Assembly: GCF_963676685.1 (NCBI RefSeq)
Contig: NC_092345.1
Span: forward strand, 44,516,001 to 44,580,000
Source of the DNA: Mytilus edulis
Taxonomy: Eukaryota
DNA: 64,000 nt
Direction of reading: 5' to 3'
Shown here: positions 3,453 to 62,273 of the stretch, piece after piece
Layout: each line of letters opens with the position of its first letter
Position numbering within the stretch: position 1 is the first letter of the stretch
Position numbers and translations under genes: made by a program
Notes under the pieces: model-generated
Databases searched by the model: none
What the model saw: only the letters and a program-made list of their open reading frames with translations
Told to the model about the DNA's origin: nothing

Positions 3453-3522
3453 GTGAGTAATGGTTACCTTTTAAGAAAGAGATTTTACACTTTAGCATGC
3501 TATATTTCAGCAATAACTTTTG

Positions 3523-4912: not shown

Positions 4913-5026
4913 GATGATGAACATTCTAGAACAAAAAGTATGAAACAGCCCAGGCCTGATTCAAAAGCATTATCCCGTAACAGGCCCGCCACCGTAATAC
5001 ATGCTGCAGAGATAAAACCTATTCGA
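4913..5026 (+). CDS. DENND1: DENND1-like internal exon (DDEHSRTK...NRPATVIHAAEIKPIR)
   Basis: ttgcag|...|gtaagt, 114 nt, phase 0-0; RPATV resembles the RRPITV segment of DENND1A. Confidence 0.85.
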
Positions 5027-40441: not shown

Positions 40442-40504
40442 TATATACTTCATTAATAAAGATTGAGCCTTTTGATAATGCACATAGATTTCCATGTTTA
40501 TAAA

Positions 40505-40861
40505 CATGGACGTCAAGTTGGTTACCTATTCCCTATTCCCTATTCGTTACCTATTCCCTATTCCCTATTCGTTACCTATTCGTTACCTATTCCCTATTCC
40601 CTATTCGTTACCTATTCGTTACCTATTCCCTATTCCCTATTCGTTACCTATTCGTTACCTATTCCCTATTCCCTATTCGTTACCTATTCCCTATTCCCTA
40701 TTCGTTACCTATTCGTTACTTATTCCCTATTCCCTATCGTTACCTATGCGTTACTTATTCGATTTTTAATATCCTTCCCCCTTTTTAATTAATTATTATG
40801 TCACCCGATCGACAATGTACAATGTAGGAATAGGGAATAGGTAACCAACTTGACGTCCATG
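40505..40861. mobile_element. MITE with CATGG termini (P-element-like) and an internal minisatellite
   Basis: 35-bp TIR CATGGACGTCAAGTTGGTTACCTATTCCCTATTCC; near-TSD TTATAAA/ATATAAA; CCTATTC/GTTA repeats. Confidence 0.75.
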
Positions 40862-40996
40862 ATATAAACAATATAATTTTTAGTCTGTGACATCACAAAT
40901 CAATACACAAAAATATTCTTGTAAATGGTAAAACGTAGGGAAGACAACAATACTTGTTCTGAAGACCGAGAACTCGATCACATTTCGTCTGGTGTT

Positions 40997-41171
40997 AATA
41001 GTTATCAAAAGTACCAGGTTTATAATTTAGTACGCCAGACGCGCGTTTCGTCTACATAAGACTCATCAGTGACGCTCATATCAAAATATTTATAAAGCCC
41101 AACAAGTACAAAGTTGAAGAGCATTGAGGATCCAAAATTCCAAAAAGTTGTGTCAAATAAGGCTAAGGTAA
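40997..41171 (-). mobile_element. 5'-truncated hammerhead-bearing retrozyme-like repeat (subfamily a)
   Basis: closely matches the reverse complement of 48865-49040. Confidence 0.8.
41032..41075 (-). ncRNA. type I hammerhead ribozyme, copy A (intact)
   Basis: GCGUCA-CUGAUGA-GUCU(UAUGU)AGAC-GAAA-CGCGCGUC^UGGCGU: full catalytic core, stems I and II, palindromic stem III ACGCGCGU; predicted cleavage between 41038 and 41037. Confidence 0.9.
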
Positions 41172-41839
41172 CTGAGAAATATATTCTACCTAGATTTGCA
41201 AGGTTTAAAACTTCCTCTATTATTGTCAGATGAAAATGTTCACCGTCCATAACACCTGACAAAATCAAACGCTAGACTATATCAATCAACGGAACCAATA
41301 GAAAATAGCTGTCATATTCTAGATTTGATACAGCTTGTATAAGGTTTCAGATTTAAAAAAAAAAATTCTCCTCTTTTAAACAGTCCGGTGTCGGAATTCA
41401 GTTGGCCCATAAACAACAAAATGTGTTCTCGTTCAATGAAATGGACGTCACATCCAAATTTAAAAAATATAAATTATCTAAAATTGTACTAAAGATACAA
41501 GACTAACTTGGCAAAGCCCAGATCATGTCGATTGCAAACTTTAAGTAGTCCTTACAAAGTTAGACAGACTATACCAGTACCATCTGCTGTGAATACCGAT
41601 GTATATATAAAGACTAGTTATTTATGAGTTTTGTTTTGGTTTGGAGAGTCACTATGGAGGCTGCTCTATATCATTTGGGAAATCCTCAGCTGTCTCCCCG
41701 AAGTCTTTTTTTTCAATTAATTACATTTTCTCTCGCATTGTCTACGTTCCCATGTGACAAGGTGATAAACGATTCTTATATTCTTATTCTAAGACTTATT
41801 TTGATATACATTTTCGGTATAATACGAAAGATGCGAAAA

Positions 41840-42215
41840 ATACCGCCAACGGGACATTCAAACTCATCGGTCAAAATAAACGGGGAAAACATGGCAAAAC
41901 GGAAAAAGACAAAAAGACAAACAACAGTACACAAAACACATCATAGAAAACAAAAGACTGAGGAACACGAACACAATAAACAACCTTTTCTGGTAGGGTA
42001 AGCCGATCTTGCTCCACATGTGACAACTACAAGTTATGTTGTTCATAGAAGTATAATTCGGTAATAAGTGTAACTCTGAAAGTGCACATTCGGAGGGGGG
42101 GGGGGGGTGGTGGTGGAAAAACTTGGAACTCTGGGTTTAATAGCTTTCTTATGAGCAGCAAACCTCTATCGAGGAAATGATGATAGGAAATACAAGCCCT
42201 GAATTTATGTATCAA
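41840..42215 (-). mobile_element. Penelope-like retroelement 3' fragment (RT C-terminal relic plus 3' UTR)
   Basis: LIHKFRACISYHHFLDRGLLLIRKLLN resembles the PLE RT thumb motif (QLIRYxRAC); the downstream cacatgtggagca...gagtttga UTR recurs at 19870, 57465 and 59360. Confidence 0.6.
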
Positions 42216-42794
42216 CGTTAAGGTTTGGTTGTTGTAGTTTAATTGCGGATTGCGAAGAGAACCCTAAAATGAAATGTCGCACAACAAGAAAATTTGCATT
42301 ACATAGAGTTGCTATAAACCATTTAAGCGACAGGCATCAAACTCTTTGAATTGTGACCTGTTTAGAGAAAAAGACAAGAAGGAATCTTGAACAGCGTTTA
42401 CATGAAGTCTAGTGTACAACCTTTTTTTTTAGAAGAGTTTGATGCAACTTGTAATGGTATTTTTACATTCCTTATAAAAATATGAAGTTGTAGTAAGATT
42501 GCCAACGAAACGTTTTTCCACAAGAGAGCAAATGACGTAGAATTTAGCAACTATACTCTCCCGTTTAAGCAAATCTTATTCAGCATGGGAAGCAATAAGC
42601 TGTCTGGTATTTTAAATGAACATGTATTCTGTTTGATTCAACTGGGGTTTTAAACAGGTTTAATCCACCATTTTCTACATAACATGCATAAGGATATGCC
42701 TTTACCAAGTCTGTAATAGGACATTTGTTTTCAATTCGTTTGATGTGTTTGGCTTTTGATTTTGCCATTTGACGAGAGACATTGCGTTTAAAAA

Positions 42795-45729
42795 TGAGAA
42801 CATCAAAGGTCAGTATTTTTGTTATTATACTTTTTAATTTAGAAACAAATTATCTTTAATTTAGGAATGTGCCAATGATATCAATAACTCAATATTCGGT
42901 TTTCAACAATAAACGGATGTCTATATGTTTTTGTTTGTTTGTCGTTTTTCTGTGCTTTACCATGATGATAATAAGTATGGGGTCTTAGTCATTTATCGGC
43001 AAATATTTTATCATATGGCTGCATCCTTTGCCTCATATAGATGTTTGTAGCATTTGATTATAGTATGAAATTGTTTATACCTTTTTCTCATTTATTGAAC
43101 AATAGTAAACCTAATGATTTTTTCAATCGTGTGAAACCTTGCCGCGAAGCATAATCGGAACAATACCATGGCTAAGTATTATGTTATATTGTATTCGTTT
43201 AAGGAACTGAGGTGATAATTTATCAGACTCTGTAGCTCTGTTTTTGGTATTTTTGCATTTATATGTACTGTATCCCCGTCATATGAAATGTTGTCAGTTT
43301 ACCAGTATCTTTAAAATTGCCATAAAGCACGGAGGTTTGGCTAGCCAAAAAACCAGGTTTAACTTACCATTTTTTCTTCATATGTCTTGTGCAGAGTCAA
43401 AAATATGGCAGTTGTTATACAAGAGTTCGTTTCTATGTATGTTGTACTGTTTGGTTTTTTTTTTTTTTTTTGCACTTCAGTGTTCTGTTGATTTTTTGTT
43501 TCCTCTTATACATTTGTAGTTGATGTGTTTCCCTTTGGTTTTAGTTTGTAACCCGGATTTGTTTTCTCTTAATTGATTTATGACTTTTGAACAGCGGTAT
43601 ACTACTTTTGCATTTATTTGTACGGGTAAATATTCTGACTTTGATCATCACTCCATTTGAAGACTCGTTAAGTTTGGAGCCTTTGTGGTTTACTCCTACT
43701 TAACAATGTTTTTATGATTTTAGTTATTAGATAGTTGTTTTGGAGTTTATTGTGACATCCATATTTACTTAACAAGTACACATATTTTTTTAGGTGCCAG
43801 CTGAGGCCCATTTTCTCGCTGCGTTACGTTAATGACCCATCGGTGGCCTTCAGCTGTTATCAGTCTCTTTTTTGGTCAGATTGTGGTCTCTTTGAAACAT
43901 TCCCCATTTCCATTCTCAATTTTAGAACAGCAGAATTATTGACTTATTCAGAGACAAGAAAAGAATGAATCTAAAGCCCCGGTCCCACTAGACCACGATA
44001 AAGTCGTAAAAGTAAATTAAGATCGTGGTGAGGTCGCAGAATGAGCAGCATGAAAATGTAAATTTTCGTTGCTTTCACGATGCTACTACGTCCTCATTAC
44101 GCTTCTACAACGATCCCGATACGGTTATACCACGTTCTCACCGCGCTTATTATGCGTCCTCACTACGCTTATCAAGATCTTTCGACGCTCATCACGTTCT
44201 CACTACGACCATACCACGAGTTATCCGATTGTAACACGATCTTACCACGCCTTTACTGCGATTATAGTACGTTCTTACCACGATTATACTACGTTCATAC
44301 CGAGATCTTACTACCATGTTTTCAGTATAATAACGTCAACATCGTGTTCCATATCATTACAATTCCATTCCTTCTATTTGTGATTAATACATGGATTTTT
44401 TTGAGAACATCAAAGGTCAGTATTTTTGTTATTATACTTTTTAATTTAGAAACAAATTATTTTTAATTTAGGAATGTGCCAATTCGATCAATAAGTCAAC
44501 ATTCGGTTTTCAACAATAGACGGGCGTCTATATGTTTGATTTTACTGTTTTTGTTTGATTGTCGTTTTTCTTTGCTTTACCATGGTGATAATAAGTATGG
44601 GTCTTAGTCATTTATCCATCCATTTATCGGCAAATATTTTATGATATGACTGCATCCTTTGCCTCATATTGATGTTTGTAGCATTTGATTATAGTATGAA
44701 ATTGTTTATACCTTTTTCTCATTTATTGAACAATAGTAAACCTAATGATTTTTTCAATCGTGTGAAACCTGCCGCGAAGCATAATCGGAACACTACCATG
44801 GCTAAGTATTATGTTATACATTTATTGTATTCGTTTGAGGTGAAAATTAATCAGACTCTGTAGCTCTGTTTTTTTGTATTTTTGCATTTATTTGTACTGT
44901 ATCCCCGTCATATGTAATGTTGTAGTTTAGCGGTATCTTTAACATTGCCATAAAGCGCGGAAGTTTGGCTAGCTAAAAAAACAGGTTTAACTAACCATTT
45001 TTTCTTCAAATGTCCTGTACAGAGTCAGAAATATGGCAGTTGTTATACAAGAGTATGTATGTTGTATTGTTGTTTGTTTTTTGTTGCACATCAGTGTTCT
45101 GTTGATTTTTTGTTTCCTCTTATACATTTATAGTTGATGTGTTTCCCTTGGTTTTTTAGTTTGTAACCCGGATCTGTTTTCTCTTAATCGATTTATGACT
45201 TTTGAACAGCGGTATATTACTTTTGCATTTATTTGTACGGGTAAATATTTTGCAGCAACTTTGATCCTTGTGAAGACTCGTAAAGTTTGGAGCCTTTGTG
45301 GTTTACTCCTACTAAAGTCTAGACTGGTTCCCGATCGCAATATTAAGTATGTTACACATATACCAATATAACGTCGTGAGAGAGTATGGCTAATAACTAA
45401 TAGGTGGAACGTAGTACCGGGAACCAGGATAACTAAAGTCGTACATAGTTTTATTAGTCTGGAATGTTTTTATAATTTTAGTTCATAGATACTTGTTTTG
45501 GAGTTTACTGTGACGTCCATTTTTACTAAACAAGTACACATATTTATTTAGGTACCAGCTGAGGACCATTTTCTCGCTGCGTTAACTTGAGACCCATTGG
45601 TGGCCTTCGGCTGTTATCAGACTTTTTTTTGGTCGGATTGTTGTCTCTTTGACATATTCCCGATTTCCATTCTCAATTTTAGAACAGCAGAATTATTGAC
45701 TTATTCAGAGACAAGAAAAGAATGAATCT
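42795..45729. repeat. direct segmental duplication (42795-43972 and 44402-45729) separated by a CACGA-rich transposon-end fragment
   Basis: collinear high-identity copies; duplicated ORF remnants. Confidence 0.9.
45320..45431. mobile_element. 112-bp MITE with 9-bp TSD (Academ-like)
   Basis: TIR TAGACTGGTTCCCG / CGGGAACCAGGATA; ACTAAAGTC duplicated at 45311-45319 and 45432-45440. Confidence 0.8.
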
Positions 45730-46548
45730 TAAACAGCGTCTAAATCAATTATGATGCAAATACAATCCTTCGGAAAATAAGGAGATGTGCTATGACTGAC
45801 ATTGAAACAATTTTCTACAAGGGAACAGTGAACAATATTGCCTACAACTATTACACGGTGGATAGATTTTTAATTTACCTCCTTAAAAACTAGATGATTT
45901 TTTTCTTTGACTTCTTATATTCATGTTACTGCAATGAATTTGGAGAATTGAAGTTTTATGGCAGTAAATAATAAAAACCCATCTTCTTATTAATTATTAT
46001 TTTGGTATGTTGTCGCCGTGCTTTGCAAATACCTTAAGATCTAAAATTTAATTCGTTATCACATATTTATCGTGTTATAACCAAATATACATTAGTTTTA
46101 AGGAATTGAATTTGCTATATTGAACTATCTTCATCGAAAACCTTACAAACCTGACAGAAATCATTGCTGTTAATGTTTCTGTTATTGATTTCAGTCAGGA
46201 ATATGACAGTTGTTTTACATTTGTTTGAAATTTTTGAGCTTTTGATATTACCATTTGATGAGGGACTTTCCGTTCAAAAATTTTCTTGGAGATTTTGTTA
46301 TTTAACCCTTTTTTTCTACATACTGTATAATGTTATGGTTGATATCAGCACACTTCAAATACATTTACCAGTCTATTGTTTCTTTAGTTATTCTACCAAA
46401 ATTCGGGAGGTAACAATCAAGAAGAGACAACTTATACATGTAATTGATTATAAAAGTTTTATATCTTAGAATATATAATAACAAAAAGTTTATCTCATTA
46501 CAATAAGTAAATGCATAAGCAAACAGTAAAATTTATTTACAAATCATG

Positions 46549-46704
46549 TTATTTTCTCATTCCTGGATTTTCAAAATATTCTTTATCCGTTTTCAACATT
46601 CGATCTTGATCCACAAGCTATTCAATGGATGGAGTGTCTATAAATTACCTCTCAATTCGTGGGGACATAAGTTTCTCTGCCATATCATAGAGTTCACCTA
46701 CAGT
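46549..46704 (-). pseudogene. isolated terminal-exon-like relic (TVGELYDMAEKLMSPRIER*FIDTPSIE*LVDQDRMLK...)
   Basis: strong acceptor catttttcag, protein-like frame broken by two stops, AATAAA just downstream (46537-46532). Confidence 0.3.
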
Positions 46705-46743
46705 CTGAAAAATGATATATATTGTTTTAGACAAATGCAGTCT

Positions 46744-47070
46744 TTGCTGACGATAATACCACCCCAGTAGTTAGCACTTGCTGACATGAATTATCATTGA
46801 TATAGTCATATTTATAAATTAACTGTTTACAAAACTCAAGTTTTGAATGTTTGAAATACTAAGGATTTTATACCTCAGGAACATATTTCCTTAGCTGTAT
46901 TTTGGCAAAACTTTCAGGAATTGTGGTCCTCAATGCTCTTCAACTTCGTACTTTATTTGGCCTTTTTAACTTTTTTGGATTCGAGCGTCACTGATGAGTC
47001 TTTTGTAGACGAAATGCGCGTCTGGAGTAAATACAAATATTGATCCTGGTATCTATGGTGAGTTTATTTA
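46744..47070 (+). mobile_element. longest hammerhead-bearing retrozyme-like repeat, about 330 bp (subfamily b)
   Basis: homologous to copies A and C around the ribozyme; its 5' part matches a fragment at 63030-63092 on -. Confidence 0.75.
46985..47028 (+). ncRNA. type I hammerhead ribozyme, copy B (near-intact)
   Basis: GCGUCA-CUGAUGA-GUCU(UUUGU)AGAC-GAAA-UGCGCGUC^UGGAGU; core intact, one U.G wobble in stem III, one mismatch in stem I; cleavage after 47022. Confidence 0.82.
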
Positions 47071-48831
47071 TATACTTGATTTATATGTACATTAATTTCT
47101 ATCATACTACGGTTTATCTCATTTATAAGATAAACCAATTTAATTAAAGAGAAATGATAACTGCTTCATTCGGATCCGGTTCTCGTTTCCCGCACATCAA
47201 CGTCACATGAGTGTGTATAGACTCACTCAAGTGGCAAGATTAAGGGGTTATGATCGTTTCCCGTAATTGTACGTCGGATCATATTAGGTTTTTACTTTCC
47301 TGCGGTACCGCAGGAAGTTCTATTGAGACCATCTCATGTCTACCCTGAGTGGCCGGTTCTGAATTGGTACCAGTTCGAGCTTGACTGTTTTATGATACAT
47401 AGTACGGCCTATGTATTCAGTGTGCATATAGAGTTTTATGATATAGAAACTGTTAATCTTTACTCCCCTGAAACCAGGGGGTGATGCGAATAAGACCCGA
47501 CGTATTTGGGGATCATAACCCTCGTTCTCTTGAGGCTGAACCTTGAGGAACTTGAGCATCCATTGCTACCAATGGTGCACAGATTTGTCAGTTAAATCAA
47601 TCATGTCGGCATTCTGTAATCATGTCAGACCTCGTCATTCTAAGTGAACTGTGGCCGTTAATTCCATGTTTTTGCCTGAAACTTTATTCTTTGATTAAAT
47701 TGTAAATATACATTTCTGATAAAATGCTAAAAAGCTTTAGTGTATAATTACGAATGAGTCACGCTCCAACATACAGGAGAACAACTCCTAGTGATTTGCC
47801 TTTTTTCTGTTTGCTTGAATGTATGACTTTTATCTGTTTTCATTTAAAAAAAAAGATATTATATGAAAAACCCCTTGAAACTAATAGTGTGATATTTTAA
47901 CAAGGAATTTATATAATGAATCCAGCGATTTAAATGTTTCATATTTTCCATGATAGTATTCTTCCAAGGTTTTAGAAAAAGCCTGTGTTCATCCAAGTAT
48001 ATTGCTATTCCTACTACCAATATTATTATTTCATATTTTTAAAAGTAACTCACCATAAAAACTTTATCCTCGTTTCAAAATCTAATCGAATGTTCACATA
48101 AATTATAACGAACCAGGTATCTTAACTAACGAATTATCTTGTTAACCAGAATAACTTTGGTGTATTTTTCTAACTCATTCCCCCCAAAAAAAATCGATTT
48201 TCTTATTTAAGATTGAACAAAAGATTTCACTAAAAAGATAAAACATGCATCTCTGAACATAGTAAAATTCTTTCTGAGTCCGGCCTAATCTCGTATCAAA
48301 ATATTAATGAGACTATCTTGAAGTGAAGCTATAATGTGTAGTAATTGCAGTATCGCTCAAACTGCAAGAAGCAAGAATCCAAAACTAAATATTCAAAATT
48401 TTGGAGATAACATTTAATGATAAGAATATTGACATCTTACATACAAATATTTTAAGATTCATGCCTAAGACTTTGCTTTTCAAATTCGTGGGGACAAAGA
48501 CGTGACCGTATCAAACCTTCTCTTTTCATTCAGTCTTTTTAAGGATACACATATTTAGATAAGGTGATTACAAATGAGACAACCATATACACTGGAGACG
48601 CGAGGATGAAGGCAACTATACTTCACAGTGTGCCCTTCAATAACGAGCGAAACTGAAGGGTATAGAAAGCTACCGTTTATCGTATTAGTTACTATAAAAG
48701 ACATATAAAAGGCTCTGTAATAAAGCTCCTTATTTTCAAATCCAGAAACTTTTAATAATTACTAGCATTTGACGTGCATTGATTGGTCTAGAACCGATAC
48801 AAGAGAGGAAATCGGACACAACATGTAATAG

Positions 48832-49040
48832 AAAAACTAAGGATTTTCTTATCCCAGGCATAGATTACCTTAGCCGTATTTGGTACAACTTTTTGGAATT
48901 TTGGATCCTCAATGCTCACCAACTTTTTACTTGTTTGGCTTTATAAATATTTTGATTTGAGCGTCACTGATGAGTCTTATGTAGACGAAACGCGCGTCTG
49001 GCGTACTAAATTCTAATCCTGGTACCTTTGATAACTATTT
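48832..49040 (+). mobile_element. 5'-truncated hammerhead-bearing retrozyme-like repeat (subfamily a)
   Basis: shared body taaggatttt...ttaccttagccgtatttgg...tcctcaatgctc, then hammerhead, then cctggtacctttgataactattt. Confidence 0.8.
48961..49004 (+). ncRNA. type I hammerhead ribozyme, copy C (intact)
   Basis: identical to copy A over 44 nt; cleavage after 48998. Confidence 0.9.
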
Positions 49041-49859
49041 AGCGACTAAATTCACCGAAAAGAAAGGAAAAAACCCAGAATAAACATCTGCAATAACATA
49101 TTATTTGCGTAAACAAATAACTAAATTCATGTGAAAATTGTTTTTAAAGGGGCATAACGTTTTTAAATTTTTTATATTTTTAAACGAGGTCAATATGTAA
49201 TCATTTTATCTAAAATAAACTCGTAAAGTTAACACATTTGAAAATGACATTAACATTTCAGCTGGAACATGATAATATTGACAGTTTACTATTCACAGAT
49301 TTAAGTAAATGGGTTATTAAAGAGCAATTTAACTATCAATGTAGGCGAGATGCCATATGCTGTATCAAAATATTTCATTTAAACTCTTATATTTGATCAT
49401 ATTTTTCTTATTAAGAACAAACAACACCTTTATGTGTTATAATACAATCCAATATAAGGTGTAAAATAGAGATGCTTTGAGTGTATTATTGAAACAAAAC
49501 AACAGCAGACATGTTCGAAAACATGATCAAAATTAACCTAATCACTCTCAACAATGCTCAAGTTATATGAAGCTTTTGTCATGTTTGTTTAAAATAACAT
49601 TATAAAAACGGACAATCGTAGTCAAACCAAAAGTTCTTTGGGAAGTATTGACTTTAAGCTGCGACTTATAGATAAAAGGACATAAAATAAGATTAGTAAA
49701 ACATATTTTTGTCTCCAAATCATAATCTGTTTTATTCATTGTTAAATCTACTTTGATATCCACAGAGCAGATATATTTATGTGTAAAACATTTTCATTTG
49801 CATTCATCTTTTTCTGGCTTTGCACACTCTCGATTGAAAAAAAAATAAATGGAAATTAA

Positions 49860-50132
49860 GGTGGTACCCAACACTTTCACTAAAATTAATTTGGCTCGTT
49901 TAATTTTCATAAAATTTTGACAAAGTATTTACTTTGACCCTTTAACAAAAATATAAAAAATTCAAAAAAATTGAACCAAGCGTTTTATCAGAAAAATTAC
50001 ACTGGTTATATAGCAGTTTGACAAACACTAATTTTGATCATTGAGAAGCTTAATATTCCCTTAACAACACAACGTCATTAAAACGTTTAGCTGATTTTAC
50101 AGAGTTATCTCCCTGTAGTGTTAGGTACCACC
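49860..50132. mobile_element. Kolobok-like MITE with TTAA TSD
   Basis: ttaa|GGTGGTACC.AACACT...AGTGTT.GGTACCACC|ttaa; degenerate relative at about 18418-18620. Confidence 0.8.
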
Positions 50133-50144
50133 TTAACCGCATGT

Positions 50145-50418
50145 TATTAGTGCAAAGACTTGCTCATTTAGGACAAATAATAAAATACCTAACTTATTCA
50201 CCAAAATGATAAGAAAAGATATATATGATCTGACATATTAGTGCAAAGACTTGCTCATTTAGGACAAATAATAAAATACCTAACTTATTCATCAAAATGA
50301 TAAGAAAAGATATATATGATCTGACATATTAGTGCAAAGACTTGCTCATTTAGGACAAATAATAAAATACCTAACTTATTCACCAAAATGATAAGAAATG
50401 ATATATATGATCTAACAT
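50145..50418. repeat. 91-bp tandem repeat x3
   Basis: near-identical units starting at 50145, 50236 and 50327. Confidence 0.95.
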
Positions 50419-51251
50419 ACCAATGTAACGTATCAAACGTTAATTGAAGCAAGTAATAGTAATAAGATTAATGATAGGTACAATGTAAAACAGTTTTTAA
50501 GATATGTCAAAGCTGAATACTTTCTAACAGCCAGCACAGGCTAACCTTTTCTACAGGCTAAACATGTTCATTAGATTAACATGTTTTCAATATCTACACT
50601 AATATTTAACCTGCAGTATTGTACGAACAACATAGCATTCAATATGGCAATATGCAATAAAGTCAAAAAAGTTCAACGGAATGTCTTCTTTCTCTATGCA
50701 AAGTAAAATCACAATAATACTGAACTCTGAGGCAAATTCAAAGAGGCAATTCACTAATAAATTGACAAAATCAAAAACCCAAACACGTCAAACGAATGGA
50801 CAACAACTGTCATATTCCCGACTTGGTACAGGCATTTTATTATGTAAAAAATGGTGGATTAAACCTGGAGTTAAGATAGCTACACCTCTCACTTGTATGA
50901 CAGTCGTATAAAATTCCAACCAAATAGCAACATTATTAAATAGTTTATTTCAAAACAAACTATTTATTTTGGGGTCTAAATTTGGGCAATACAGAATATT
51001 TGAAAGTATTAATATTGACCGTCTACCCTTCAAGCAAAGTTTCAGCTTTCTGAACTTAAAGACATATTGTTTATTTTTTCGTTAAACATTTGTTTCATTG
51101 TAGATACAGAAATATGGATTTAGAATCATACAACATTTCCTGTATTTCATTTGAAAATTAAATGTTCCTGTGAATTAAGGCAACACTATTTTACCGTCCG
51201 ATATTAAAATTTCAGAAGATACAAATCGAGGCAACAAAAACAATATTTAAG

Positions 51252-51602
51252 AATTGAATGCTTCTTTTTGTAAATTTATTGGGGTGTAAAAGCGTTGACC
51301 GAAGTACATTTTGTATGAAGCGCTTCCGCGCTTCATTCTAAAAATGTACGCACGGTCAACGCTTTTACAACCCTATAAAGTTACAAAAAGAAGCATTCAA
51401 TACTTATAATTACATTTTTTAGCTATGATCATGAAAACACGAATTTTATATATTTTATTATTTAATTCACCTGTGCACTTTATTGTTGGAGCACGTGTTA
51501 TCATGAGTGAAAAGTTATATTGAGCAATGGAACTGCTTACGGAATAACACGTGAACTGCTTACGGAATAACACGATAATGAAACATACATCTAATGTAAT
51601 TA
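51252..51602 (+). repeat. hairpin-plus-tail interspersed element, family 1 copy 2
   Basis: collinear with 8346-8704. Confidence 0.75.
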
Positions 51603-54600
51603 TAAGGGAATACATTCAGCTGCTAGTATTTGTTAAGAATTGTAAGTCTGATACAAATTATAAGTTATTGTAAGTCACATACAAATTATTAATTGTTATT
51701 AACCTTCAATTAATGAAATGTTAGACAGATTCAAATTAATTCTTTTTCATTGCGGATATCTCTCGGTTCAATATTGGGCGATGAAAAACATTTTATTTGT
51801 ACAGCTATTATGAATATGTGTAGAGGAAGATATACGATAGGGGCAGTATTTTGTCTCTGCAATTAAAAAAAAATATAGCAAAATTTGGGAAAATATATTT
51901 GTGAATCAAGGATTTGCCCATAACGACGATATTTCAAAGCATCTCTGAAAATTTTTCTTACAGCAAAATATTTTTTGGAGTCGGGCTTTTGTAATAAGAA
52001 GTTTTTAAAAAAAATGAGGCTATTTTGCAGTGCTTGTGGTTTCGCATTAAATGCAAGTACCTTGGATCAGAAACAAATTTTTGAGATATAATTAAACATA
52101 CGAAATATTGATTTTCAACAGACAAATGTTTTATGAACATATTGCTGTTGTTAAATCAAAGGTTTGTAATTTTTTTTTTATTTTGGAATTCGAGAGAATA
52201 ATAATCTTCGATCTCCTTTTCAAACTATTCAAAACATTCTTAGAAAACATATATGAAAACATATATGATGATTTAGTATGATCTCCAAAGAGATAACATT
52301 TACCAGAGGCACCGATGAAAGCAACTATGGTTCAATGGGCAGCCTTGTACAACATCTATACCACATTGTAAGGTACGAAAGACTCAACAACTCTTTGGTT
52401 GTGGTCATTTGAATCCTACGAATAGAAGACCGGATATCGCCCGCACTTTGTTATAGTCAATGGGCAATTTAATGACTTAATTCATTGAGCAAAAAAAGAA
52501 AAAAAAACTATGAAAAATCTGAAAAGACATACTAGTCAATACCGTAAAAACAATGAATTGAAATCATGTGAACATTGTTTTTCAAGAGGAATAACGTTTT
52601 TACATTTTCAATATTCTTAAACTAGGTCAATATGAAATTCCTGCATCTACCAACGAAATCTACATCCAAAAAGATATTCATCAAGTTAACACATTTGAAA
52701 CTGACATTAACATTTCAGCTGGAACATAATATATTGACAGCATACTATTCCTAGATTGTAATGGGTATTTTAAAACAAATTAAGCAATCAATGTGGGCTT
52801 CGCATGATGCCATGTTCTATATAAGGACCATTTGATATTAAAAGCGCTAATAGCACTTTCATGTGTTATAATAAACTGCAGTGTAAGGTGAAAAGTTCAG
52901 ATACTTCGAGAGCTTTGCTTTTTGTCCTTTTTTTTAAGGAACCAGTCATTATTTATCGGGGGGGACTGTATATTTGAAATGAGCAAATATAATTGACCCC
53001 CACTTTTAACATGTGTAAACACAAAATCCCCCCCCCCTTTCTTTCAACTACATAAACACTTTTGACCCCCCTCTTTTCTGATTATAATTGAAAGGTTTCA
53101 AATTATTTAACCTTCATAATAATTATTTTTATGTTGCTAATATTCATATCAACAGGTAAAATAGGTCAAAGGAAATGAAAATCAGGTATTTAATAAACAT
53201 ACACAGAAATGCATTGGGCATGTTGAGGACAACAAACAACAAATAGAAGGATACCTTGTTGTAAAAGAGGGACGAAAAATACCAGAGAGACAGTTAAACT
53301 CTTAGATGTAACTTTGACAGCATTTATATTAAAATATTTTAAAACTAGATAACTATATAATAAAAACGGACAATCTTAGTTAAACACACAGTTCTCTAAA
53401 AAATATATTGTCATTCAGCTGGGACAAATAGATAAAGAAAGATGAGTCAAAGAAAAAATAATGAAAAAGACACGTTATATATTTCATGAATTCGAAGCGC
53501 TTTTCCAGTTTTACCTTACCTTCATCGAATACGCTTAAAGGATTTTTTTTTTACATGACATAGATGTTAAATTTATTTTTCAATGTCTTTGTCTTCCTAA
53601 ACGTGTTTTTTTATGATTTTTTTTCTTGCCAGCCACTTTGTTAATTGTAGGTTACATGTAATAATTTTCTCATCTCCACAATCTTATTACAAAGATGTTA
53701 TCATGGAATCTTAAAGATGGATAATTTTTAATTTTCAAATAACGTCTCTTATTTTCTGAAAATTTCTATATTGTAAGATGTACGTTTCAAAGGGTGGCGA
53801 AATCCACAACTGTGTTTTAAAGAGTTTAAGTAGTTGATTATTTCTATAAATAGTTGCTCAATCTTCGAAAAGTCTGTTTACCATTGTCACAAGAATGTAA
53901 CTGTCTCCTCAATAGTTTTGTTCGTTTATGATAGAATTTTGTCGAAACTTCTAGGTTATATTAGACTTTAAGGTTATAATCTTGGACTGTGATGAAGGTT
54001 TGTTTTCCACTAGAAATAATACAAACTAAGCAATATTTGGATAACGTTAGCCTGTGTCCGAACCTCATAGGGGAGCGAGAATCATCAACAACACTACACT
54101 ATGGAACAATGGTAAGGATTTATATAGCTTTCAAAGTTGTGGTACTTCCTTATCATAAGAGATCATAACATACTTTTTTAGACATTAAATTTCCCTTAAA
54201 AAAACTATTTTATTTTGAATTCGACTCTTCCATTTGTTTTCACTGGTGATTCATACAAACGAAAGTGAAATTAACCGTATCGCTTTATTATAAAGCCTTA
54301 AATTACCAGCTACTACCATATGATATAGGTCAAATACCGACTTAATTTTACAAAATGAAAAGAAACAACTAATGTGTGTGACCTGATACACCTATGTATC
54401 GTGTTTAAACATTACGTAAATTATCAAATATCAAACATATTGTTTAAAGCACTAAACACATTTTTCAAAGCACTAAAACATTTTCAAAAGCACCGAACAC
54501 ATTACATAGAAATTTCATCACTATATCGAGTGTGATACGATATTTATCTACTCGAGATAGTTAAATTTTTTAATTTAAAATTAGACGATCGCCGAGCCTT

Positions 54601-56550
54601 TTAAATAATTTAAATTTAACTGTAGATGGTGGATAAATATCGTAATGACACGATTTGGTGGTGGAATCTGTATCTCTTATGATTTTTAAACGATATGGAA
54701 ACACACTCAATCCTTCGTTCCAAATGATCTGATGAAAAGATGTTTTCTAAGAATGTTTTAAATAGTTTGAAAAGGAGATCGACGATTATTATTCTCTCGA
54801 ATTCCAAAATAAAAAAATATTACAAACCTTTGATTTAACAACAGCAATATGTTCATAAAACATTTGATCAATGCAAATATGTAGATATTGATAGATTGTA
54901 GGATCGTGAATATGCATATGGGTACAATATATATTAATACCAATCAAAACAATATTCAAAGATCTAATAATCATTCTAAACGGTGCACATATATTTCATC
55001 TACAACAACCTTTAAAGTCGCCCCTCTCTATATTGTCCAAAATAAACTTACAATGCTCGCCACGTCTTACTTCAGATCTATGAGTATACTATAAATGTGT
55101 TTTAGAGGAGAAATTTGACAACGCTTAGAAGTGGTTAATGTACGTAAATCTGAAGTTCTCTGAAACACTCTGAAGTTAACAAAATGAGATTAAAAGTGGG
55201 ACACTTTAAATTAATTTCAGACCAAGTTATTTGTTGCCGAGGAAACATTGGAACAGCGTTTCTCATTTTCTGAGTGTTTAAAACCTTCTACATTGCTCAA
55301 CGACGCAAACGAACTGTGTGGTCAAAGATAATTCTCAGGACATATTTATAGTACAAAAACATTGCAACTGTATTCCAGCGCTCAATAGTAAAATATCAAA
55401 ATATTTCGGCGATATTCTTGTTATTTAAAGTTCATAGTTAAATTAACAATTTTTTAAAGAGAAAATTAAATTGATGGAAGTTAAGTTCCGTATGTACTCA
55501 TGTCAGGTTAGGATTTGTTGTCAGATATTCCCCAACGTACAGGGTAAAATATTTGTCGCATACCACCCACTTTTCTTTTCATAGAAGACTTTAACAGGTA
55601 ATAAAATGTCATTATCAAATATAAGCAGACTCTAATTAAGACCCAAACAACGACCATGCTGAATATAAGGTTATTGTTTGAGTCAACTTATCCCCGCCTT
55701 TAAAAACAAACCAGATATCCCGAAATGGAGTTCATAACCTATCAATATTTTATATAATATGATATTTGTTCCTTAACTTATGCTCTTCTGACTTATAGTA
55801 TTACATGTAGTTATATATTGTAGATAATTTTAATATCAACTTTCTGACAGTTTTTATTAGGGTAGTGGTTGTGAAGTGAATGTTGTTGTTTTTTTAAATA
55901 CGTCATTTTGGTCATTTGAACGTGTTAATGTAATGACAAATTTGCGTAAGCGTGTTTAAATGTTTTTGGTATGATCTAAACAAAATTGGGTTTTTTAACA
56001 ATAAGCGCGCTTTGGTACAATGAGACATTGTGTTTGTTATTCCTGAATCGTGGAAGATGACAGTTGAAAAGTTAAAGTCCTCTGAATCGTGGAAGATGAC
56101 AGATGAAAAGTTAAGTCCTCACGTTTGTCAAGGACTCTAGTTTGAACTGATTCTCCGTTTTGAGGAAAATCTAGTAAATATGCCGACGATTGTGGAAACG
56201 TATCGATTGAAGTTTTGAAAGAAGCATTTGATTATCAAGCCGGGAAATATCCAGAGATGACTGAGTATGCATATATATATGAGTATTTGACGGCTAAATC
56301 ACACAAAATAAATTCTTGAATGCATTTTGTATCTATGATTTTTATACGTGAAGGGAAAAACATGGTTTAAGGACGATTTCGCTAATTTGTTTCATTAAAA
56401 AATCGTGAAAATTGTGATATTTTTGAAACTATTCAAAATTTAACTTTATAACTGTAATAACACGCTATTTTGATTTACCACGCTGATTTTCGGTTAATGG
56501 TATTCTAATGTCATGGATAAGCGTGTTAAATGTGTGGGATATTTGTCTTA

Positions 56551-59500
56551 TTTGAAAGTGTTAACATTGTTTCTTGTTTAATTCAGTGTTTAAAAGTATA
56601 ATGAAATTGACCTTTTCTTCCTTGGTGCAATCATTATTTATTCTTTACTTGAAGACTAAAAAAACAAAACAATTGTTAATGTATATAAACATATTTTGTT
56701 TTACTGATGGGACACATTGAAAAAAAACAAACACAAAAAACTACTCTTGGGAGTATGCAATCCTTAGTGTTTGAAATAATTCAACATTTCAAATCCAGTA
56801 AAAGTAACCTTTCTTGGACGTTGGACAACCAACAGTCAATCAATACACCCTTTCTTAAATGCAAAAATAAGCTAATTAGAAAATGCAATCCCGTCTTATT
56901 TACAATATTAGATAAAATAGCATAACTTCAAACTTCCGAATAGTCATTGTCGTAAAAATCAAACATCGTCTAATGTCAACTTTATCAGAGAATTTCTTAT
57001 CTTAAAAGGGGTCAAACACATAAATATTGTAGAGTATAAAAACTAAATAGTGACGAAACATCCAAAAGTCTAAATTAAACTTTGACTGAGTAAAAAGGCG
57101 ACCAGAAGCTTTCATTAAATTTCTAAACATTTCTGTATGTGTATAGTTCTGTAAGAATTGGCACACCTCACTACCGTGAAAATCATTTGGGCCGGCTCCC
57201 TTATAGGCACGGTCAGTTATTGACATTTATACCTTTGCATAAGTAACGTGTAAAAGATTGTTTAAATTGAACAACTAATGATTAATCAATGATATGTGGT
57301 ATGCATTTGAATTAGTAAACAATTTCTCATTTGCATAGAGATGATTTGGCTCTTGATTTTAGTTCTGGTTCATTGACTTCATAGCTTTCCATTATATTAT
57401 TATTGACCACGATATGTGACATACAGGGCACTGAAAAATCTTTGCGATTAGTTTGCAAGTTTCACACCACGGGTGCCACATGTGGATCAGGATCTGCTTA
57501 CCCTCCCGGAGCACCTGAGATCACCCCAGTTTTTTGTGGGATTCGTGTTGCTTAGTCTTTAGTTTTCTATGTTGTGTACTATTATTTTTCTGTTTGTCTT
57601 TTTCTTTTTTAAGCCATGACATTGTCAGTTATTTGTCGTTCTATGAGTTTGACTGTCCCTTTGGTATCTTTTGCCCCCTCTTTTGCAAAAGTGTAAGCAT
57701 GTCTTCTCTATTGAATTATGAAAATAAACAGATAGACCATGATTACCAATGAGACATCGCTACCTAACATAGACCAAAAGGACCAACAGTACAGGCCTTC
57801 GTATGACCATTACAAAAGGAGTAATACCTACTTGTAGCATATTCGATCCGTCCTATTCCTAACAAATAGATAATACAACAGATAGTTATTAGGATAACAG
57901 CAGGGCTACTTTATGGACATCCACATAATATCATGCATCTTGAAAATAACAGTTTATAGACATTTTTGTTAATATCTGAATAATTTTCGTGCGTTTTTTT
58001 TTCAAACTATAATTTGTTTCTTCATAAAACAAAATATGTGTACCTACATTACTAGTAACTACATGTATTGTTTTTAATGTGAAAAAGTAGGGTTTATTCT
58101 TACAATATGTCTTTAAGTTAAGAATGGAAAAATCTTGCATAAAGGGTGGAAATGTCAATTTTATTATAATTTTGCACAATGAATAAAACTTGAAACAATG
58201 ATAACACTTTCAAATTTGACATATCTCCCACTTTTAACAGTTTTCAACATGAAATTTCACTGAAAAAAATCGTGTAAATACAAGACAGCTGGACTGTTAT
58301 TACAGTTAAACAGATGACCTGTTTTTAACTTTGAATAGATTTGACGGTTTCTCAAAATGAGACAAAGTTAGAACATAAACTGAGAAGATGTATATAGCTT
58401 GCCTTAACCGTATTTCGGAATTTTCTGTTTTAATGCTTTTAATTTAATACTTGGTGTTTGACTTCAAATGGTTTGAAAGTGTTAACATTGTTTCTTGTTT
58501 AATTCAGTGTGTAAAAGTATAATGAAATTGACTTTCTTCTTGGTGCAATCATAATTATTCTTTACTAGAAGACTAAAAAAAAAACAATTGTTTATGTATA
58601 TAAACATATTTTGTTTTACTGATGGGACACATTGAAAAAAAAAAACCACACAAAAAACTACTCTTGGGAGTATGAAATCCTTAGTGTTTGAAATAATTCA
58701 ACATTTCAAATCCAGTAAAAGTAACCTTTTTTTTGACGTAGGACAACCAACAGTCAATCAATACATCCTTTCTTAAATGCAAAAATAAGCTAATTATAAA
58801 ATGCAATCCCGTCTTAATTACAATATAAGATAAAATAGCATTACTTCAAACTTCCGAATAGTCATTGTCGTAAAAATCAAACATCGTCTAATGTCAACTT
58901 TATCAGAGAATTTCTGATCTTAAAAGAGTCAAATACATAAATATTGTAGAGTATAAAAACTAAATAGTGACGAAACATCCAAATTAAACTTTGACTGAGT
59001 AATAAGGTGGCCAGAAGCTTTCATTAAATTTCTAAACATTTCTGTAGGTGTATAGTTCTGTAAGAATTGGCACACCTCACTACCGTGAAAATCATTCGGG
59101 CCGGCTTCCTTATAGGCACGGTCAGTTATTGACATTTATACCTTTGCATAAGTAACGTGTAAAAGATTGTTTAAATTGAACAACTAATGATTAATCAATG
59201 ATATGTGGTATGCATTTGAATCAGCAAACAATTTCTCATTTGCATAGAGATGATTTGGCTCTCGATTAAGGTTCTGGTTCATTGACTTCATAGCTTTCCA
59301 TTATATTGACCCCAATATGTGAGGCACTGCAAAATCTTTGCGATTAGTTTGCCAGTTTCACACCACAGATGCCACATGTGGAACACGATCTGCTTATCCT
59401 TCCAAAGCACCTGAAATCACCACCAGTTTTTAATGGGGTTCGTGCTGCTTAGTCTTTAGTTTTCTGTGTTGTGTTTTATTATTTTTCTGTTTGTCTTTTT

Positions 59501-60177
59501 CTTTTTTAAGCCATGACGTTGTCAGTTATTTGTCGATCTATGAGTTTGACTGTCCCTTTGGTATCTTTTGCCCCCTCTTTTGCAAAAGTGTGAGCATGTC
59601 TTCTCTATTGATTTATGAAAAAAAAAACAGATAGACCATGATTACCAATGATACATTGCTATCCAACAAAGACCAAAAGAATCAGGAGTACAGGCGTTCG
59701 TATGACCATTACAACAGGAGTAATACCTACTTGTAGCACATTCGATCTGTCCTATTCCTAACAAAACGGTAATACAACAGATAGTTATTAGAATAACAGG
59801 GCTACTTCATGGACATCTACATAATATCAAGCATCTTGATAATGTGATAATGTCAGTTTATAGACAATTTTGTCAATTTCGGATTAATTTTGCGCTTCAA
59901 ATTTGACATATCTCCCACATTTAACAGTTTTAAACATGCCATTTAAATGAAAATCAGCTTGTTAATACGAGACAGCTTGACTGTTATTACAGTTGAATAG
60001 CAGACCTGTTTTTAACTTCTAATAGTTGGAAAAACGTCATATTTTTGTCCGTTTTTTAAATGAGACCAATCTAGGTGATAAACTATGAAGGTGTATAATA
60101 TAGATTGCCTTAACCGTATTTAGGATTTTTCAGTTTTAATGCTTTTCGATTTCATACTTGGTTTTGACTTCAAAGGG
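56551..60177. repeat. tandem duplication (56551-58471 and 58472-60177)
   Basis: TTTGAAAGTGTTAACATTG at 56551 and 58472; duplicated ORFs at 57002 and 58929; about 0.2-kb indel. Confidence 0.92.
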
Positions 60178-60187
60178 TTTGATGCGA

Positions 60188-60231
60188 GCGCCACTGACGA
60201 GTTTTATGTATAATAAAGGCGCACTTGGTGT
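60188..60231 (+). ncRNA. decayed hammerhead, copy D
   Basis: CUGACGA retained but GAAA changed to UAAA; stems II and III disrupted. Confidence 0.6.
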
Positions 60232-60538
60232 ACTTTAAACTTATCAGCCTAATATCTTTGATGAATTTTAAAAATCGATAAATTTATTTCACGACGAACT
60301 TTCATCCTTCCCTTATATATACGGAAAACTGTGTATTAATATGTAGTTTTGCTTGAATTTCAGTCCTAATAGCACGAGAATCACTAAGTATATTCGCATG
60401 CTAGATTTATTAAAAATTCATAACTCCTAGAATTGAGGATAAAACCAAAGAAAAAGACAACGATTCGAGCAAAATACAGCCAGGAAATACCGGAGGCGGA
60501 CAATATAGACTAGTTCATCGAAATTAACGCAACAATAA

Positions 60539-60562
60539 ACACACACACACACACACACACAC
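60539..60562. repeat. (AC)n microsatellite
   Basis: direct reading. Confidence 0.9.
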
Positions 60563-61194
60563 AAGATTAACAACGGCTGGAGCTCCCTGACTGACAAGCG
60601 CCAAACTGCGGCTTGTTAAACATGTTTTGTGATACAGCAAACGTCCACCTATATCTCTAGCCAATGTGAGATAAACAAACACACAGCAATGTGCACAATA
60701 TAAAACCGTTTCAAAGAAGCGCGAGTTGATGTTTGAATAGGTAACAGAAGAATATAAGAAAAATTGCAATATCGACATAAATTAACGAAAGGACTACTAG
60801 CATTTCCTGACATGATCTAGCTCCAGACTTCAATTGAAGTGATTGAAAGATCATTACTACAACATATAGTACCTGTGTTCCACGCAATTCCTTGACAAAA
60901 GGGGTCTCTTTTTGGGCAAATTTTCCAGTAGGTGTTCTCTCTGCAGTTCTGTTTTGATTTTCTTGCTTCGTATATGTACCATTGTTGAATTTCACTTCTT
61001 TATTTATCTAAATATAAAAAACAAATAGTAATAAGCTTATTTAAATGTTTACATATACTAAATTGATTGTCGTACACTAAATAAGTGACTAGACATTTCC
61101 AGTGTTTTTGAACTCATATATTATAGTTATATGAATAAATCATATATAGGGTGAACATACTCATCATAGATACTAGGATTGAAATTGTATATTT

Positions 61195-61237
61195 GCGCCA
61201 ACGCGCGCCTCGTCTACAAAAGACTTATTAGTGACGC
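61195..61237 (-). ncRNA. decayed hammerhead, copy E
   Basis: core mutated (CUAAUAA, GAGG); stem II and flanks match copy B. Confidence 0.65.
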
Positions 61238-62273
61238 TCGAATCAAAGCAAGTTAAAAAGGTAAAAAAAAGCGTAAAGTTTAAGAGCATGAAAAAAACCC
61301 ACCAACTTATAATTCAGCAACACAACATCACACTGTAAATCATAAGTAGTAGACTTCTCCGCCTTTCCTTGTAAGATATTGACGATAACTATTTTATTTC
61401 TGACGAATTAAATCAGTTGTACAAGTTCGAGAAATTAATGATATCGAAATATCCTGATTTGTTATAACGAATTTACTCAGTGATATCGAGTTACAAAATC
61501 GACAAATCTGTGATCACTATTCTCTAAAATTCGTGATCACGAATTCAAATCATTTCATGGAGGTCCTAAATGGAATTGCTTAGTTATGGCCAAACGTTGT
61601 GGGTCTGAGGGAATGTCACTGCACAGATATAGGAAAAAAGTAAAATAACAAAAATACTGAACTCCGAGGAAAATTCAAAACGGAAAGTCCCTAATCAAAT
61701 GGCAAATTCAAATGATAAAACACACCAAACGAAAGGACAACAACTGTCATATTCTTGACTAGGTAAAGGCATTCTCAAATGTAGAAAAGGAAGATATGGT
61801 ATGAATGCCAATGAAACAACTCTCCATCCAAGTCACAATTTATAAAAGTAAACCATTATAGGTCAAGGTACGATCTTCAACACGAAGCCTTGACTCACAC
61901 AGAACAGCAAGCTATAAAGGGCCCAAAAATTACTAGTGTAAAGCTATTCAAACGGGAAAACCAACGGTCTAATCTATTTAAAAAAAACCCGATAAACGAT
62001 AAACACTTATGAACCACATCAACAAAGGACAACTACTGAACATCAGATTCCTGACTTAGGACAGGTGCAAACAATTGCAGCGGATCTTTATGGTACCAAA
62101 CCTTCACCCTTATATGAAATAATTGTGTAGCATCACAACATAGAAAGACATGTAGGTATATATGATCACTTGTAAAGAATGTATCCAAGACTTGTGTACC
62201 GAAAATTTGATAAACTAACATTACAACAGATTTTTCTGCACAAAACTGGAAACCATGTTTTACTTTCTTTATA

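What the first reader, a model, noticed from the sequence alone, without database searches (positions are those of the whole stretch)
40997..61290. Dispersed family of self-cleaving type I hammerhead ribozyme repeats (retrozyme-like), five copies in 20 kb
Seen: copies at 41075-41032 (-), 46985-47028 (+) and 48961-49004 (+) contain the complete hammerhead core CUGAUGA...GAAA with a GUC cleavage triplet, a 4-bp stem II and a stem I. Copies at 60188 (+) and 61237 (-) are mutated in the core. Two subfamilies differ in loop II (UAUGU vs UUUGU) and in flanks. Established: non-coding, hammerhead-bearing non-LTR retrozymes that yield small circular RNAs are known in metazoans, including Mytilus. Inference: these are members of such a family, caught at different stages of decay.
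Basis: partly seen in the sequence, partly recalled or inferred. Interest (0 to 1): 0.85.

Follow-up and report, generated by a model that had tools for sequence, protein, structure and literature searches.

The report
Truncated mussel hammerhead retrozyme copies
These are five short, 5'-truncated single copies of a mobile element already described in mussels that carries a self-cleaving hammerhead ribozyme. They are real but ordinary, because this genome holds about 11,700 such ribozyme cores and these copies are too short to release an RNA circle.

Summary
Three copies (41075-41032 minus, 46985-47028 plus, 48961-49004 plus) carry a complete type I hammerhead. They score 33.0, 24.7 and 33.0 bits on Rfam RF00163, whose gathering score is 34. 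Two further copies (about 60184-60232 plus, 61237-61194 minus) are homologous but have dead cores.

The copies belong to the non-LTR retrozyme family of Mytilus (Cervera and de la Pena 2020).

None of the five is a whole unit. Each is a 140-310 base piece with one ribozyme, a variable 5' end and the same 3' end about 43-49 bases past the cleavage site, as in every other insertion I examined.

RNA reads pile up on the repeat parts but come from full-length copies elsewhere, and the flanks read zero.

The genome has 11,714 exact 32-base cores, so two in 64 kb is not unusual. The scan has noted this family on many other pieces of this genome.

The element is already known. My only addition is the shared 3' end, which fits reverse transcription from a fixed start on a joined RNA template.

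The parts
40990..41171 (-). A-subfamily retrozyme fragment covering unit positions 222 to 355 and then 1 to 48. The intact hammerhead is at 41075-41032 and the predicted cleavage is between 41038 and 41037.
   Evidence: BLAST to the 355-base unit gives 95.6% identity. Rfam scores 33.0 bits. The helices are intact.
46763..47070 (+). B-subfamily retrozyme fragment covering unit positions about 107 to 365 and then 1 to 48. The hammerhead is at 46985-47028 and the predicted cleavage is between 47022 and 47023. Private changes at 47015 (T) and 47026 (A) weaken helix III and helix I.
   Evidence: BLAST to the 365-base B unit gives 82.5% identity. Rfam scores 24.7 bits. Expressed family RNAs read C at both positions in most reads (table 3). 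Published primer 110D matches 46783-46810.
48832..49041 (+). A-subfamily retrozyme fragment covering unit positions 189 to 355 and then 1 to 43. The intact hammerhead is at 48961-49004 and the predicted cleavage is between 48998 and 48999.
   Evidence: BLAST gives 96.2% identity. Rfam scores 33.0 bits. The helices are intact.
60100..60262 (+). Old, decayed retrozyme fragment covering unit positions about 217 to 34. The ribozyme remnant lies at about 60184-60232. GAAA and GUC are lost.
   Evidence: 68.5% identity to the A unit. Alignment A1. Sequence read directly.
61151..61289 (-). Old, decayed B-type fragment covering unit positions about 277 to 49. The ribozyme remnant lies at 61237-61194, with CUGAUGA changed to CUAAUAA and GAAA changed to GAGG.
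   Evidence: 78% identity to the B unit. Sequence read directly. Primer 109R matches with 3 mismatches.

Best explanation
The five repeats are dead-on-arrival, 5'-truncated single insertions of the mussel non-LTR retrozyme. This is a non-coding mobile element of about 355 bases (A type) or 365 bases (B type) whose only known active part is a type I hammerhead ribozyme.

How the family works, as established by Cervera and de la Pena 2020 and not re-shown here: tandem copies are transcribed, and the hammerhead cuts 3' of GUC in each unit. The unit-length RNA is then closed into a circle, most likely by a tRNA ligase.

Inferred here from the insertion anatomy: the RNA is copied into DNA by a borrowed reverse transcriptase, probably from a Penelope-like element. 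Copying starts at one fixed site about 43-49 bases downstream of the cleavage site. It runs back across the rejoined or uncut cleavage junction for a variable distance, from a fraction of a unit to many turns. This gives insertions with one shared 3' end and ragged 5' ends.

The window's copies are the short products, 0.4 to 0.85 of a unit with one ribozyme each. They can at most cut a host transcript that runs through them. They cannot release a circle and show no transcription of their own.
For: Family membership:
- Rfam hammerhead matches.
- The published Mytilus retrozyme primers match.
- The window pieces align at 96% to a 355-base unit that forms an 8.7-unit array at 97-100% identity on contig C5.
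- There are 11,714 exact cores genome-wide and 0 for the reversed-pattern control.

Fixed 3' end and variable 5' end:
- In 22 insertions from 30 loci, every 3' end lies at unit position 36-46. The 5' ends range from 41 to 333.
- The five window copies were not chosen by their ends, and they finish at 43, 48, about 48, about 49 and about 34-45.
- Incidental copies in loci fetched for another purpose (L042, L066, the L032 B-type copy) end at the same site.
- In RNA reads, hundreds of reads diverge into mutually unlike sequence exactly at 49038-49040 (table 7).
- All insertions span the 355|1 junction, so the template was joined there.

RNA:
- Depth is 130-1,500x on 46782-47063 and 48850-49037, and 0 at 48192-48755 and 49132-49225.
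- 73-83% of laid reads run on into sequence unlike the window.
- At 49041, between 262 and 863 reads per run continue with the unit's own next bases.
- Only 46-132 of 3,500-5,400 laid reads are 99% or more alike.
- No pile-up of read ends at either cleavage site reached the tool's listing threshold.

No coding capacity: there is no ORF over 173 aa in 38-64 kb and no RT or endonuclease domain.

Partner: the genome has at least 858 GIY-YIG candidates, some in ORFs of 784 aa or more. A 2026 preprint derives vertebrate retrozymes from Penelope-like pseudo-LTRs.
Against: - No target-site duplication is detectable: longest shared flank word is 5.3 on average against 5.0 in mismatched pairs. There is no poly(A) tail.
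- No Penelope-like element among 35 loci shares the retrozyme's 3' region. Their hammerheads are other, minimal types.
- Most of the 22 insertions were found with a query that reached unit position 41. Copies ending earlier would have ranked lower. One incidental copy ends at about position 30.
- A genome-wide count meant to measure the share of terminal tails was inconclusive. 40% of exact tails continue into the next unit, but only 54% keep an 11-base control extension on the other side.
- Circularity cannot be told from uncut multimers with these reads.
- The Rfam score is 1 bit under the curated threshold.
Confidence: 0.88

Rival explanations
1. The repeats are pieces of the pseudo-LTRs of autonomous Penelope-like elements, not of a separate non-coding retrozyme.
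For: Penelope-like elements carry type I hammerheads near their 3' ends and form partial tandems with 5'-truncated copies. The genome is rich in them.
Against: There is no RT or GIY-YIG ORF in 38-64 kb. The pieces align end to end with a 355-base non-coding tandem unit. The Penelope-like loci sampled carry different, minimal hammerheads and no similarity to the unit apart from chance retrozyme insertions.
Confidence: 0.05
2. The copies were spread at the DNA level, as satellite fragments moved by unequal exchange, segmental duplication or reinsertion of circular DNA, with no RNA intermediate.
For: There are tandem arrays, no target-site duplications and no poly(A). Four loci on C12 carry the same insertion with the same flanks, which is DNA-level copying.
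Against: DNA breakage should give random ends on both sides. Instead the 3' end is fixed within a few bases while 5' ends vary over the whole unit. The flanks of different insertions are unrelated. The family is abundantly transcribed.
Confidence: 0.05
3. The two same-strand ribozymes at 46985 and 48961 act together here. They would cut out the 1,976 bases between 47022 and 48998 as a large processed or circular RNA carrying host sequence.
For: Both are on the + strand with usable cores. The published work says any sequence flanked by such ribozymes could be released.
Against: Three RNA runs give zero depth over 48192-48755 and almost none over 47722-48191. There are no read ends at either cleavage site and no back-joint linking 48998 to 47023. 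The 47k ribozyme has two weakening private changes.
Confidence: 0.02

Closest known systems
Mytilus galloprovincialis non-LTR retrozyme (Cervera and de la Pena, Nucleic Acids Res 2020, PMC7229834; clone Mg353, HHR A and HHR B)
   Same: The ribozyme sequence is the same, with stem II GUCU/AGAC, a 2-bp helix III capped by GCGC and a GUC site. There are the same two loop II variants in similar proportions, a 350-390 base unit, low GC (0.39 and 0.36), no coding capacity and high RNA levels. The paper's primers match.
   Different: The window holds only sub-unit single fragments, not the tandem units that give circles. The species of this genome is not known to me. The shared 3' terminus of the insertions is not mentioned in the two papers from that group that I read.
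Penelope-like elements and their pseudo-LTR hammerheads (Cervera and de la Pena 2014; Arkhipova lab 2021, PMC8557442; preprint 10.64898/2026.07.22.740005)
   Same: Both have a type I hammerhead close to the 3' end of the inserted unit. Both form head-to-tail partial tandems with a 5'-truncated upstream copy, lack poly(A) and have unclear target duplications. They co-occur in the same genome.
   Different: There is no ORF. The hammerhead has a real, if short, helix III rather than the minimal form. I found no sequence similarity to the Penelope-like loci sampled here.
Newt and axolotl satellite 2 retrozymes
   Same: Both are about 330-350 base tandem units with a type I hammerhead whose helix III is very short and capped by a palindromic tetraloop. 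Both are expressed as unit-length linear and circular RNA.
   Different: The amphibian ribozymes need a dimer to cut well. The mussel one cuts as a monomer at about 0.1 per minute according to the paper. The unit sequences are unrelated.
Schistosoma Sm-alpha hammerhead SINE
   Same: Both are short dispersed non-coding retroposons carrying a type I hammerhead (my own knowledge).
   Different: Sm-alpha has a tRNA-like Pol III head. ARAGORN and Rfam find no tRNA-like part in this unit.

Membership tests
Mytilus non-LTR retrozyme (Cervera and de la Pena 2020) | Type I hammerhead with the CUGANGA / GAAA / RUH core, stem II, helix III and an open helix I | tested here: met
   Met in three of the five copies. 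The other two are decayed homologues.
Mytilus non-LTR retrozyme (Cervera and de la Pena 2020) | Sequence homology to the published mussel clones | tested here: met
   Primers 109R, 110D and 110R from the paper's supplement match the window copies and the genome's units. I compared the published Mg353 insert with the 47k copy by eye only.
Mytilus non-LTR retrozyme (Cervera and de la Pena 2020) | Tandem repeats of about 350-390 bases (dimers to multimers) | tested here: not met
   The family meets this elsewhere in the genome, with 355-base arrays on C5, C7 and C12. The five window copies are single sub-unit fragments. They are members by descent, not functional units.
Mytilus non-LTR retrozyme (Cervera and de la Pena 2020) | Non-coding, GC below 45-50%, no LTR, PBS or PPT | tested here: met
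   GC is 0.39 and 0.36. There are no ORFs with domains. No flanking direct repeats appear around the copies. PBS and PPT were not searched for specifically.
Mytilus non-LTR retrozyme (Cervera and de la Pena 2020) | Abundant unit-length RNA that is circular | tested here: inconclusive
   RNA is abundant and reads cross the cleavage junction, with no end pile-up listed there. This fits circles but equally fits uncut multimers. No RNase R or divergent-primer data are available here.
Mytilus non-LTR retrozyme (Cervera and de la Pena 2020) | Self-cleavage 3' of GUC | not testable with these tools
   The paper showed it for clone Mg353, at about 0.1 per minute. The A-type ribozyme here differs from that clone's ribozyme by one loop II base.
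Rfam RF00163 Hammerhead_1 | Bit score at or above the gathering score of 34 | tested here: not met
   Scores are 33.0, 33.0 and 24.7 bits. All are full-length model matches with E of 8e-5 in 22 kb, one bit short of the threshold.
Penelope-like element (autonomous) | ORF with reverse transcriptase and GIY-YIG endonuclease next to the hammerhead-bearing repeat | tested here: not met
   No such ORF lies in 38-64 kb.
tRNA-derived SINE | tRNA-like head with Pol III A and B boxes | tested here: not met
   ARAGORN finds 0 genes on the array. Rfam finds no tRNA match at E up to 10 on a dimer. The only trace is a B-box-like word, GGGTCGATGCC, at unit positions 50-60, seen by eye.

The most novel reading that the evidence does not exclude
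Every insertion of this retrozyme ends within a few bases of unit position 43-49, whether it is a 140-base stub or a nine-unit array. That position lies directly 5' of the most conserved, structured part of the unit (positions about 44-130, with compensatory changes in two hairpins). Every insertion also crosses the ribozyme's cleavage junction.

This would be a genomic footprint of reverse transcription that starts at one internal site of a closed RNA circle, next to a recognition hairpin, and runs round the circle a variable distance. If so, metazoan retrozymes would have the conserved cis motif that the 2020 review said was missing, and it could be used to find the partner enzyme.
Probability: 0.35. 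Interest if true: 0.4.

Novelty: already known. Interest (0 to 1): 0.17.

Why it matters
For annotation, these five pieces should be masked as retrozyme fragments and not reported as ribozyme genes or circular-RNA loci. For the biology of retrozymes, single truncated copies like these appear to be the majority class: about 70 of the first 100 exact cores listed have no exact-core partner at unit spacing. Their shared 3' end is a cheap, testable clue to where copying into DNA starts and which enzyme does it. An intact ribozyme in a fragment could still cut a host transcript that runs through it, but I saw no sign of that here.

Tried and rejected
- Rfam at gathering threshold: no hit. The permissive scan showed the hammerheads lie 1 bit under the threshold.
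- Target-site duplications: none above the mismatched-pair control in 22 insertions.
- Autonomous partner: 30 GIY-YIG loci plus 5 wider stretches were scanned for hammerheads and for similarity to the unit. I found only unrelated minimal hammerheads (L034, L035, L039) and chance retrozyme insertions (L042, L063, L066, L068). Retrozyme-like ribozymes at the same offset in L062 and L063 proved to lie outside that element, which ends at a (TA)n tract.
- tRNA or Pol III head: none.
- Circular fold of the 355-base unit: -77.9 kcal/mol, 59% paired, z = -0.96 against shuffles. This single unit is not unusually structured as a whole.
- Genome-wide counts of the tail alone (4,574), tail plus next unit (1,843) and tail plus upstream control (2,460): too confounded by subfamily variation to give the share of terminal tails.
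- The apparent joints 46836-to-48831 and similar in the read table are family reads split between the two window copies, not splicing.
Single genomic units (L031 7092-7446 and L032 1310-1674) served as references.
Full report
**1. Observation**

The 24-base core motif with a free loop occurs three times in the window and never in 100 shuffles. These are 41032-41075 minus and 48961-49004 plus (33.0 bits, E 8e-5) and 46985-47028 plus (24.7 bits). The family's gathering score is 34, which is why the default scan was empty.

Read directly, the 41k and 49k ribozymes have:
- a 6-bp helix I;
- a 4-bp stem II (GUCU/AGAC) with loop UAUGU;
- a 2-bp helix III capped by the palindrome GCGC;
- a GUC cleavage site.

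The 47k copy has loop UUUGU, a wobble in helix III and one helix I mismatch. The copies at about 60184-60232 (plus) and 61237-61194 (minus) align with the others over 140-170 bases but have lost essential core bases.

**2. What the repeats are**

A search of the window's own genome (1.37 Gb, window at C2:44516001-44580000) with the 175-base shared part gave over 1,100 candidates. These include runs at 355-base spacing. One run on C5 is an 8.7-unit tandem array at 97-100% identity.

I set the unit to begin at the predicted cleavage site. On that numbering the window pieces cover:
- A-type positions 189 to 355 then 1 to 43 (48832-49041, 96.2%);
- A-type positions 222 to 355 then 1 to 48 (41171-40990, 95.6%);
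- B-type positions about 107 to 365 then 1 to 48 (46763-47070, 82.5% to one 365-base B unit);
- B-type positions 277 to 49 (61289-61151, 78%);
- A-type positions 217 to 34 (60100-60262, 68.5%).

None of the five is a whole unit, and each holds one ribozyme.

**3. Identity with a published family**

Cervera and de la Pena (2020, PMC7229834) described about 5,000 type I hammerheads of two similar kinds in Mytilus galloprovincialis. They sit in repeats of 350-390 bp. A cloned copy self-cleaves at about 0.1 per minute, and circular RNA reaches very high levels in gonad and mantle.

Their supplement gives primers and the clone Mg353. The primer matches are:
- 109R matches the three intact window ribozymes with one mismatch each;
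- 110D matches 46783-46810 with two mismatches;
- 110R matches the C5 units exactly.

The genome holds 11,714 exact copies of the 32-base core and none of the reversed control. That is one per 117 kb, so two exact cores in a 64-kb window is unremarkable (Poisson probability about 0.1). About 70 of those first 100 have no exact-core partner at unit spacing, so single copies like the window's appear to be the common state. The same scan has already noted this family on many other pieces of this genome.

**4. Anatomy of insertions**

In 22 insertions from 30 fetched loci, every 3' end lies at unit position 36-46, in the words GATAACTAT(TTACAC). This holds from stubs up to the 8.7-unit array. The 5' ends fall anywhere from position 41 to 333.

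That sample is partly biased, because my query reached position 41. Other observations are free of that bias:
- The five window copies were not chosen by their ends, and they stop at the same place in both subfamilies.
- So do incidental copies in loci fetched for another reason (L042, L066, the L032 B-type copy), with one exception at about position 30.
- Hundreds of RNA reads diverge into mutually unlike sequence exactly at 49038-49040 (table 7).

There is no poly(A) tail and no target-site duplication above a mismatched-pair control. Every insertion crosses the 355|1 junction.

A fixed 3' end with ragged 5' ends is the usual mark of reverse transcription from a defined start with premature stops. 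Crossing the junction means the template was either an uncut multimer or a re-closed circle. This agrees with the published rolling-circle idea and with the partial-tandem, 5'-truncated layout of Penelope-like elements. A July 2026 preprint derives vertebrate retrozymes from Penelope-like pseudo-LTRs and notes that monomer derivatives are common.

These mechanistic steps are inferred, not shown.

**5. RNA**

Three raw-read RNA runs of the species label that best holds this DNA were laid on 46500-49300 at 90% likeness. The results were:
- Depth is 130-220x on the 47k copy and 300-1,500x on the 49k copy.
- Depth is zero on 48192-48755 and on 49132-49225.
- 73-83% of laid reads continue into sequence unlike the window.
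- At 49041, between 262 and 863 reads per run go on with the unit's own next bases.
- At 48831 they come in from the unit's upstream part.
- Only 46-132 of 3,500-5,400 laid reads are 99% or more alike.

The RNA therefore comes from full-length relatives elsewhere, and nothing shows that the window's fragments are transcribed.

No pile-up of read ends is listed at either cleavage site. The tool lists a place only when the ends reach a fifth of the neighbouring depth, so by that rule fewer than a fifth of molecules end there. This fits mostly joined (circular or uncut) RNA but cannot separate the two.

Most expressed B-type RNAs read C at 47015 and 47026, where the window has T and A. The weakening changes in the 47k ribozyme are therefore private to this copy.

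**6. Rivals**

- *Pseudo-LTR fragments of an autonomous Penelope-like element.* There is no RT or endonuclease ORF in 38-64 kb. The sampled Penelope-like loci have different, minimal hammerheads and no similarity to the unit.
- *Spread at the DNA level only.* This does not explain one fixed end and one ragged end, although DNA-level copying does occur: four C12 loci share the same insertion and flanks.
- *A 1,976-base cassette excised by the two same-strand ribozymes.* There is no read cover over much of the interval, no ends at the sites and no back-joint.
- *A tRNA-headed SINE.* No tRNA-like part was found.

**7. Limits**

- The autonomous partner was not found.
- A genome-wide count of terminal against internal tails was inconclusive.
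- The single A unit is not unusually structured as a circle (z = -0.96).
Single genomic units served as references.

**8. Verdict**

This is a correct sighting of an already described element. The window's copies are ordinary dead fragments. The only addition of any novelty is the shared 3' terminus next to a conserved structured domain, which needs a full census before it can be claimed.

Noticed in passing
L031 7135-7220 (unit positions about 44-130); absent from the window's 41k and 49k copies: This is the most conserved non-ribozyme part of the unit, 80-84% identical between the A and B types. It folds into a stem (ACUGGG/CCCAGU) enclosing a hairpin, followed by a second hairpin. Divergent copies show compensatory double changes in both hairpins. 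Examples are GGACG/CGUCC against GGACU/AGUCC, and GUCAGCAC/GUGUUGAC against GCCAGUAC/GUACUGGC. It lies directly 3' of the shared insertion end.
   Followed up: partly
window 46876-47063 against 48850-49037: In RNA runs X21 and X22 the A-type copy shows a 3-4 to 1 excess of one read direction, which implies a stranded library and mostly ribozyme-sense RNA. The B-type copy shows about 1 to 1. Either B-type loci are transcribed from both strands or antisense B RNA exists.
   Followed up: no
L009, L018, L019, L020 (C12, 59.9-62.8 Mb): Four loci carry the same exactly unit-length insertion (positions 41 to 355 to 46, with TTACAC at both ends) with near-identical flanks. This is a segmental duplication or a retrozyme captured inside a larger repeat.
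   Followed up: no
L045-L063 (for example C9:78182739, C7:30900339): A Penelope-like family has a 784-aa ORF with a C-terminal GIY-YIG domain. Its copies are 99-100% identical to each other and the element ends about 200 bases after the stop codon at a (TA)n tract. It looks recently active.
   Followed up: partly
L068 4386 (+) = L062 192 (+): A third hammerhead-like motif has the same build but another sequence: core CUGAAGA, stem II GACA/UGUC, and a 2-bp helix III capped by the palindrome CCGG.
   Followed up: no
window 47100-47720: This stretch gets 10-30x of reads with several differences in the random-primed run X24 only, and high contig depth in X1. It looks like another repeated, transcribed element.
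   Followed up: no
window 46798-46833: In run X24, over 330 reads share only this 36-base piece and continue on both sides with near-uniform sequence unlike the window (agreement 0.99). An abundant transcript elsewhere therefore contains this short piece (table 7).
   Followed up: no
window 42795-45732 and 56720-60025: There are two local tandem duplications with periods of about 1.6-1.76 kb and about 1.9 kb, at 85-98% identity. Short-period satellites (periods 20-30 and 11-25 bases) lie at 39034-40762.
   Followed up: no
window 51231-51423: A long near-perfect hairpin (arms of 71 bases, 83% complementary) gives a sub-threshold match to the mir-5014 model, 44.7 bits against a gathering score of 101. 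It is more likely an inverted-repeat transposon than a microRNA gene.
   Followed up: no
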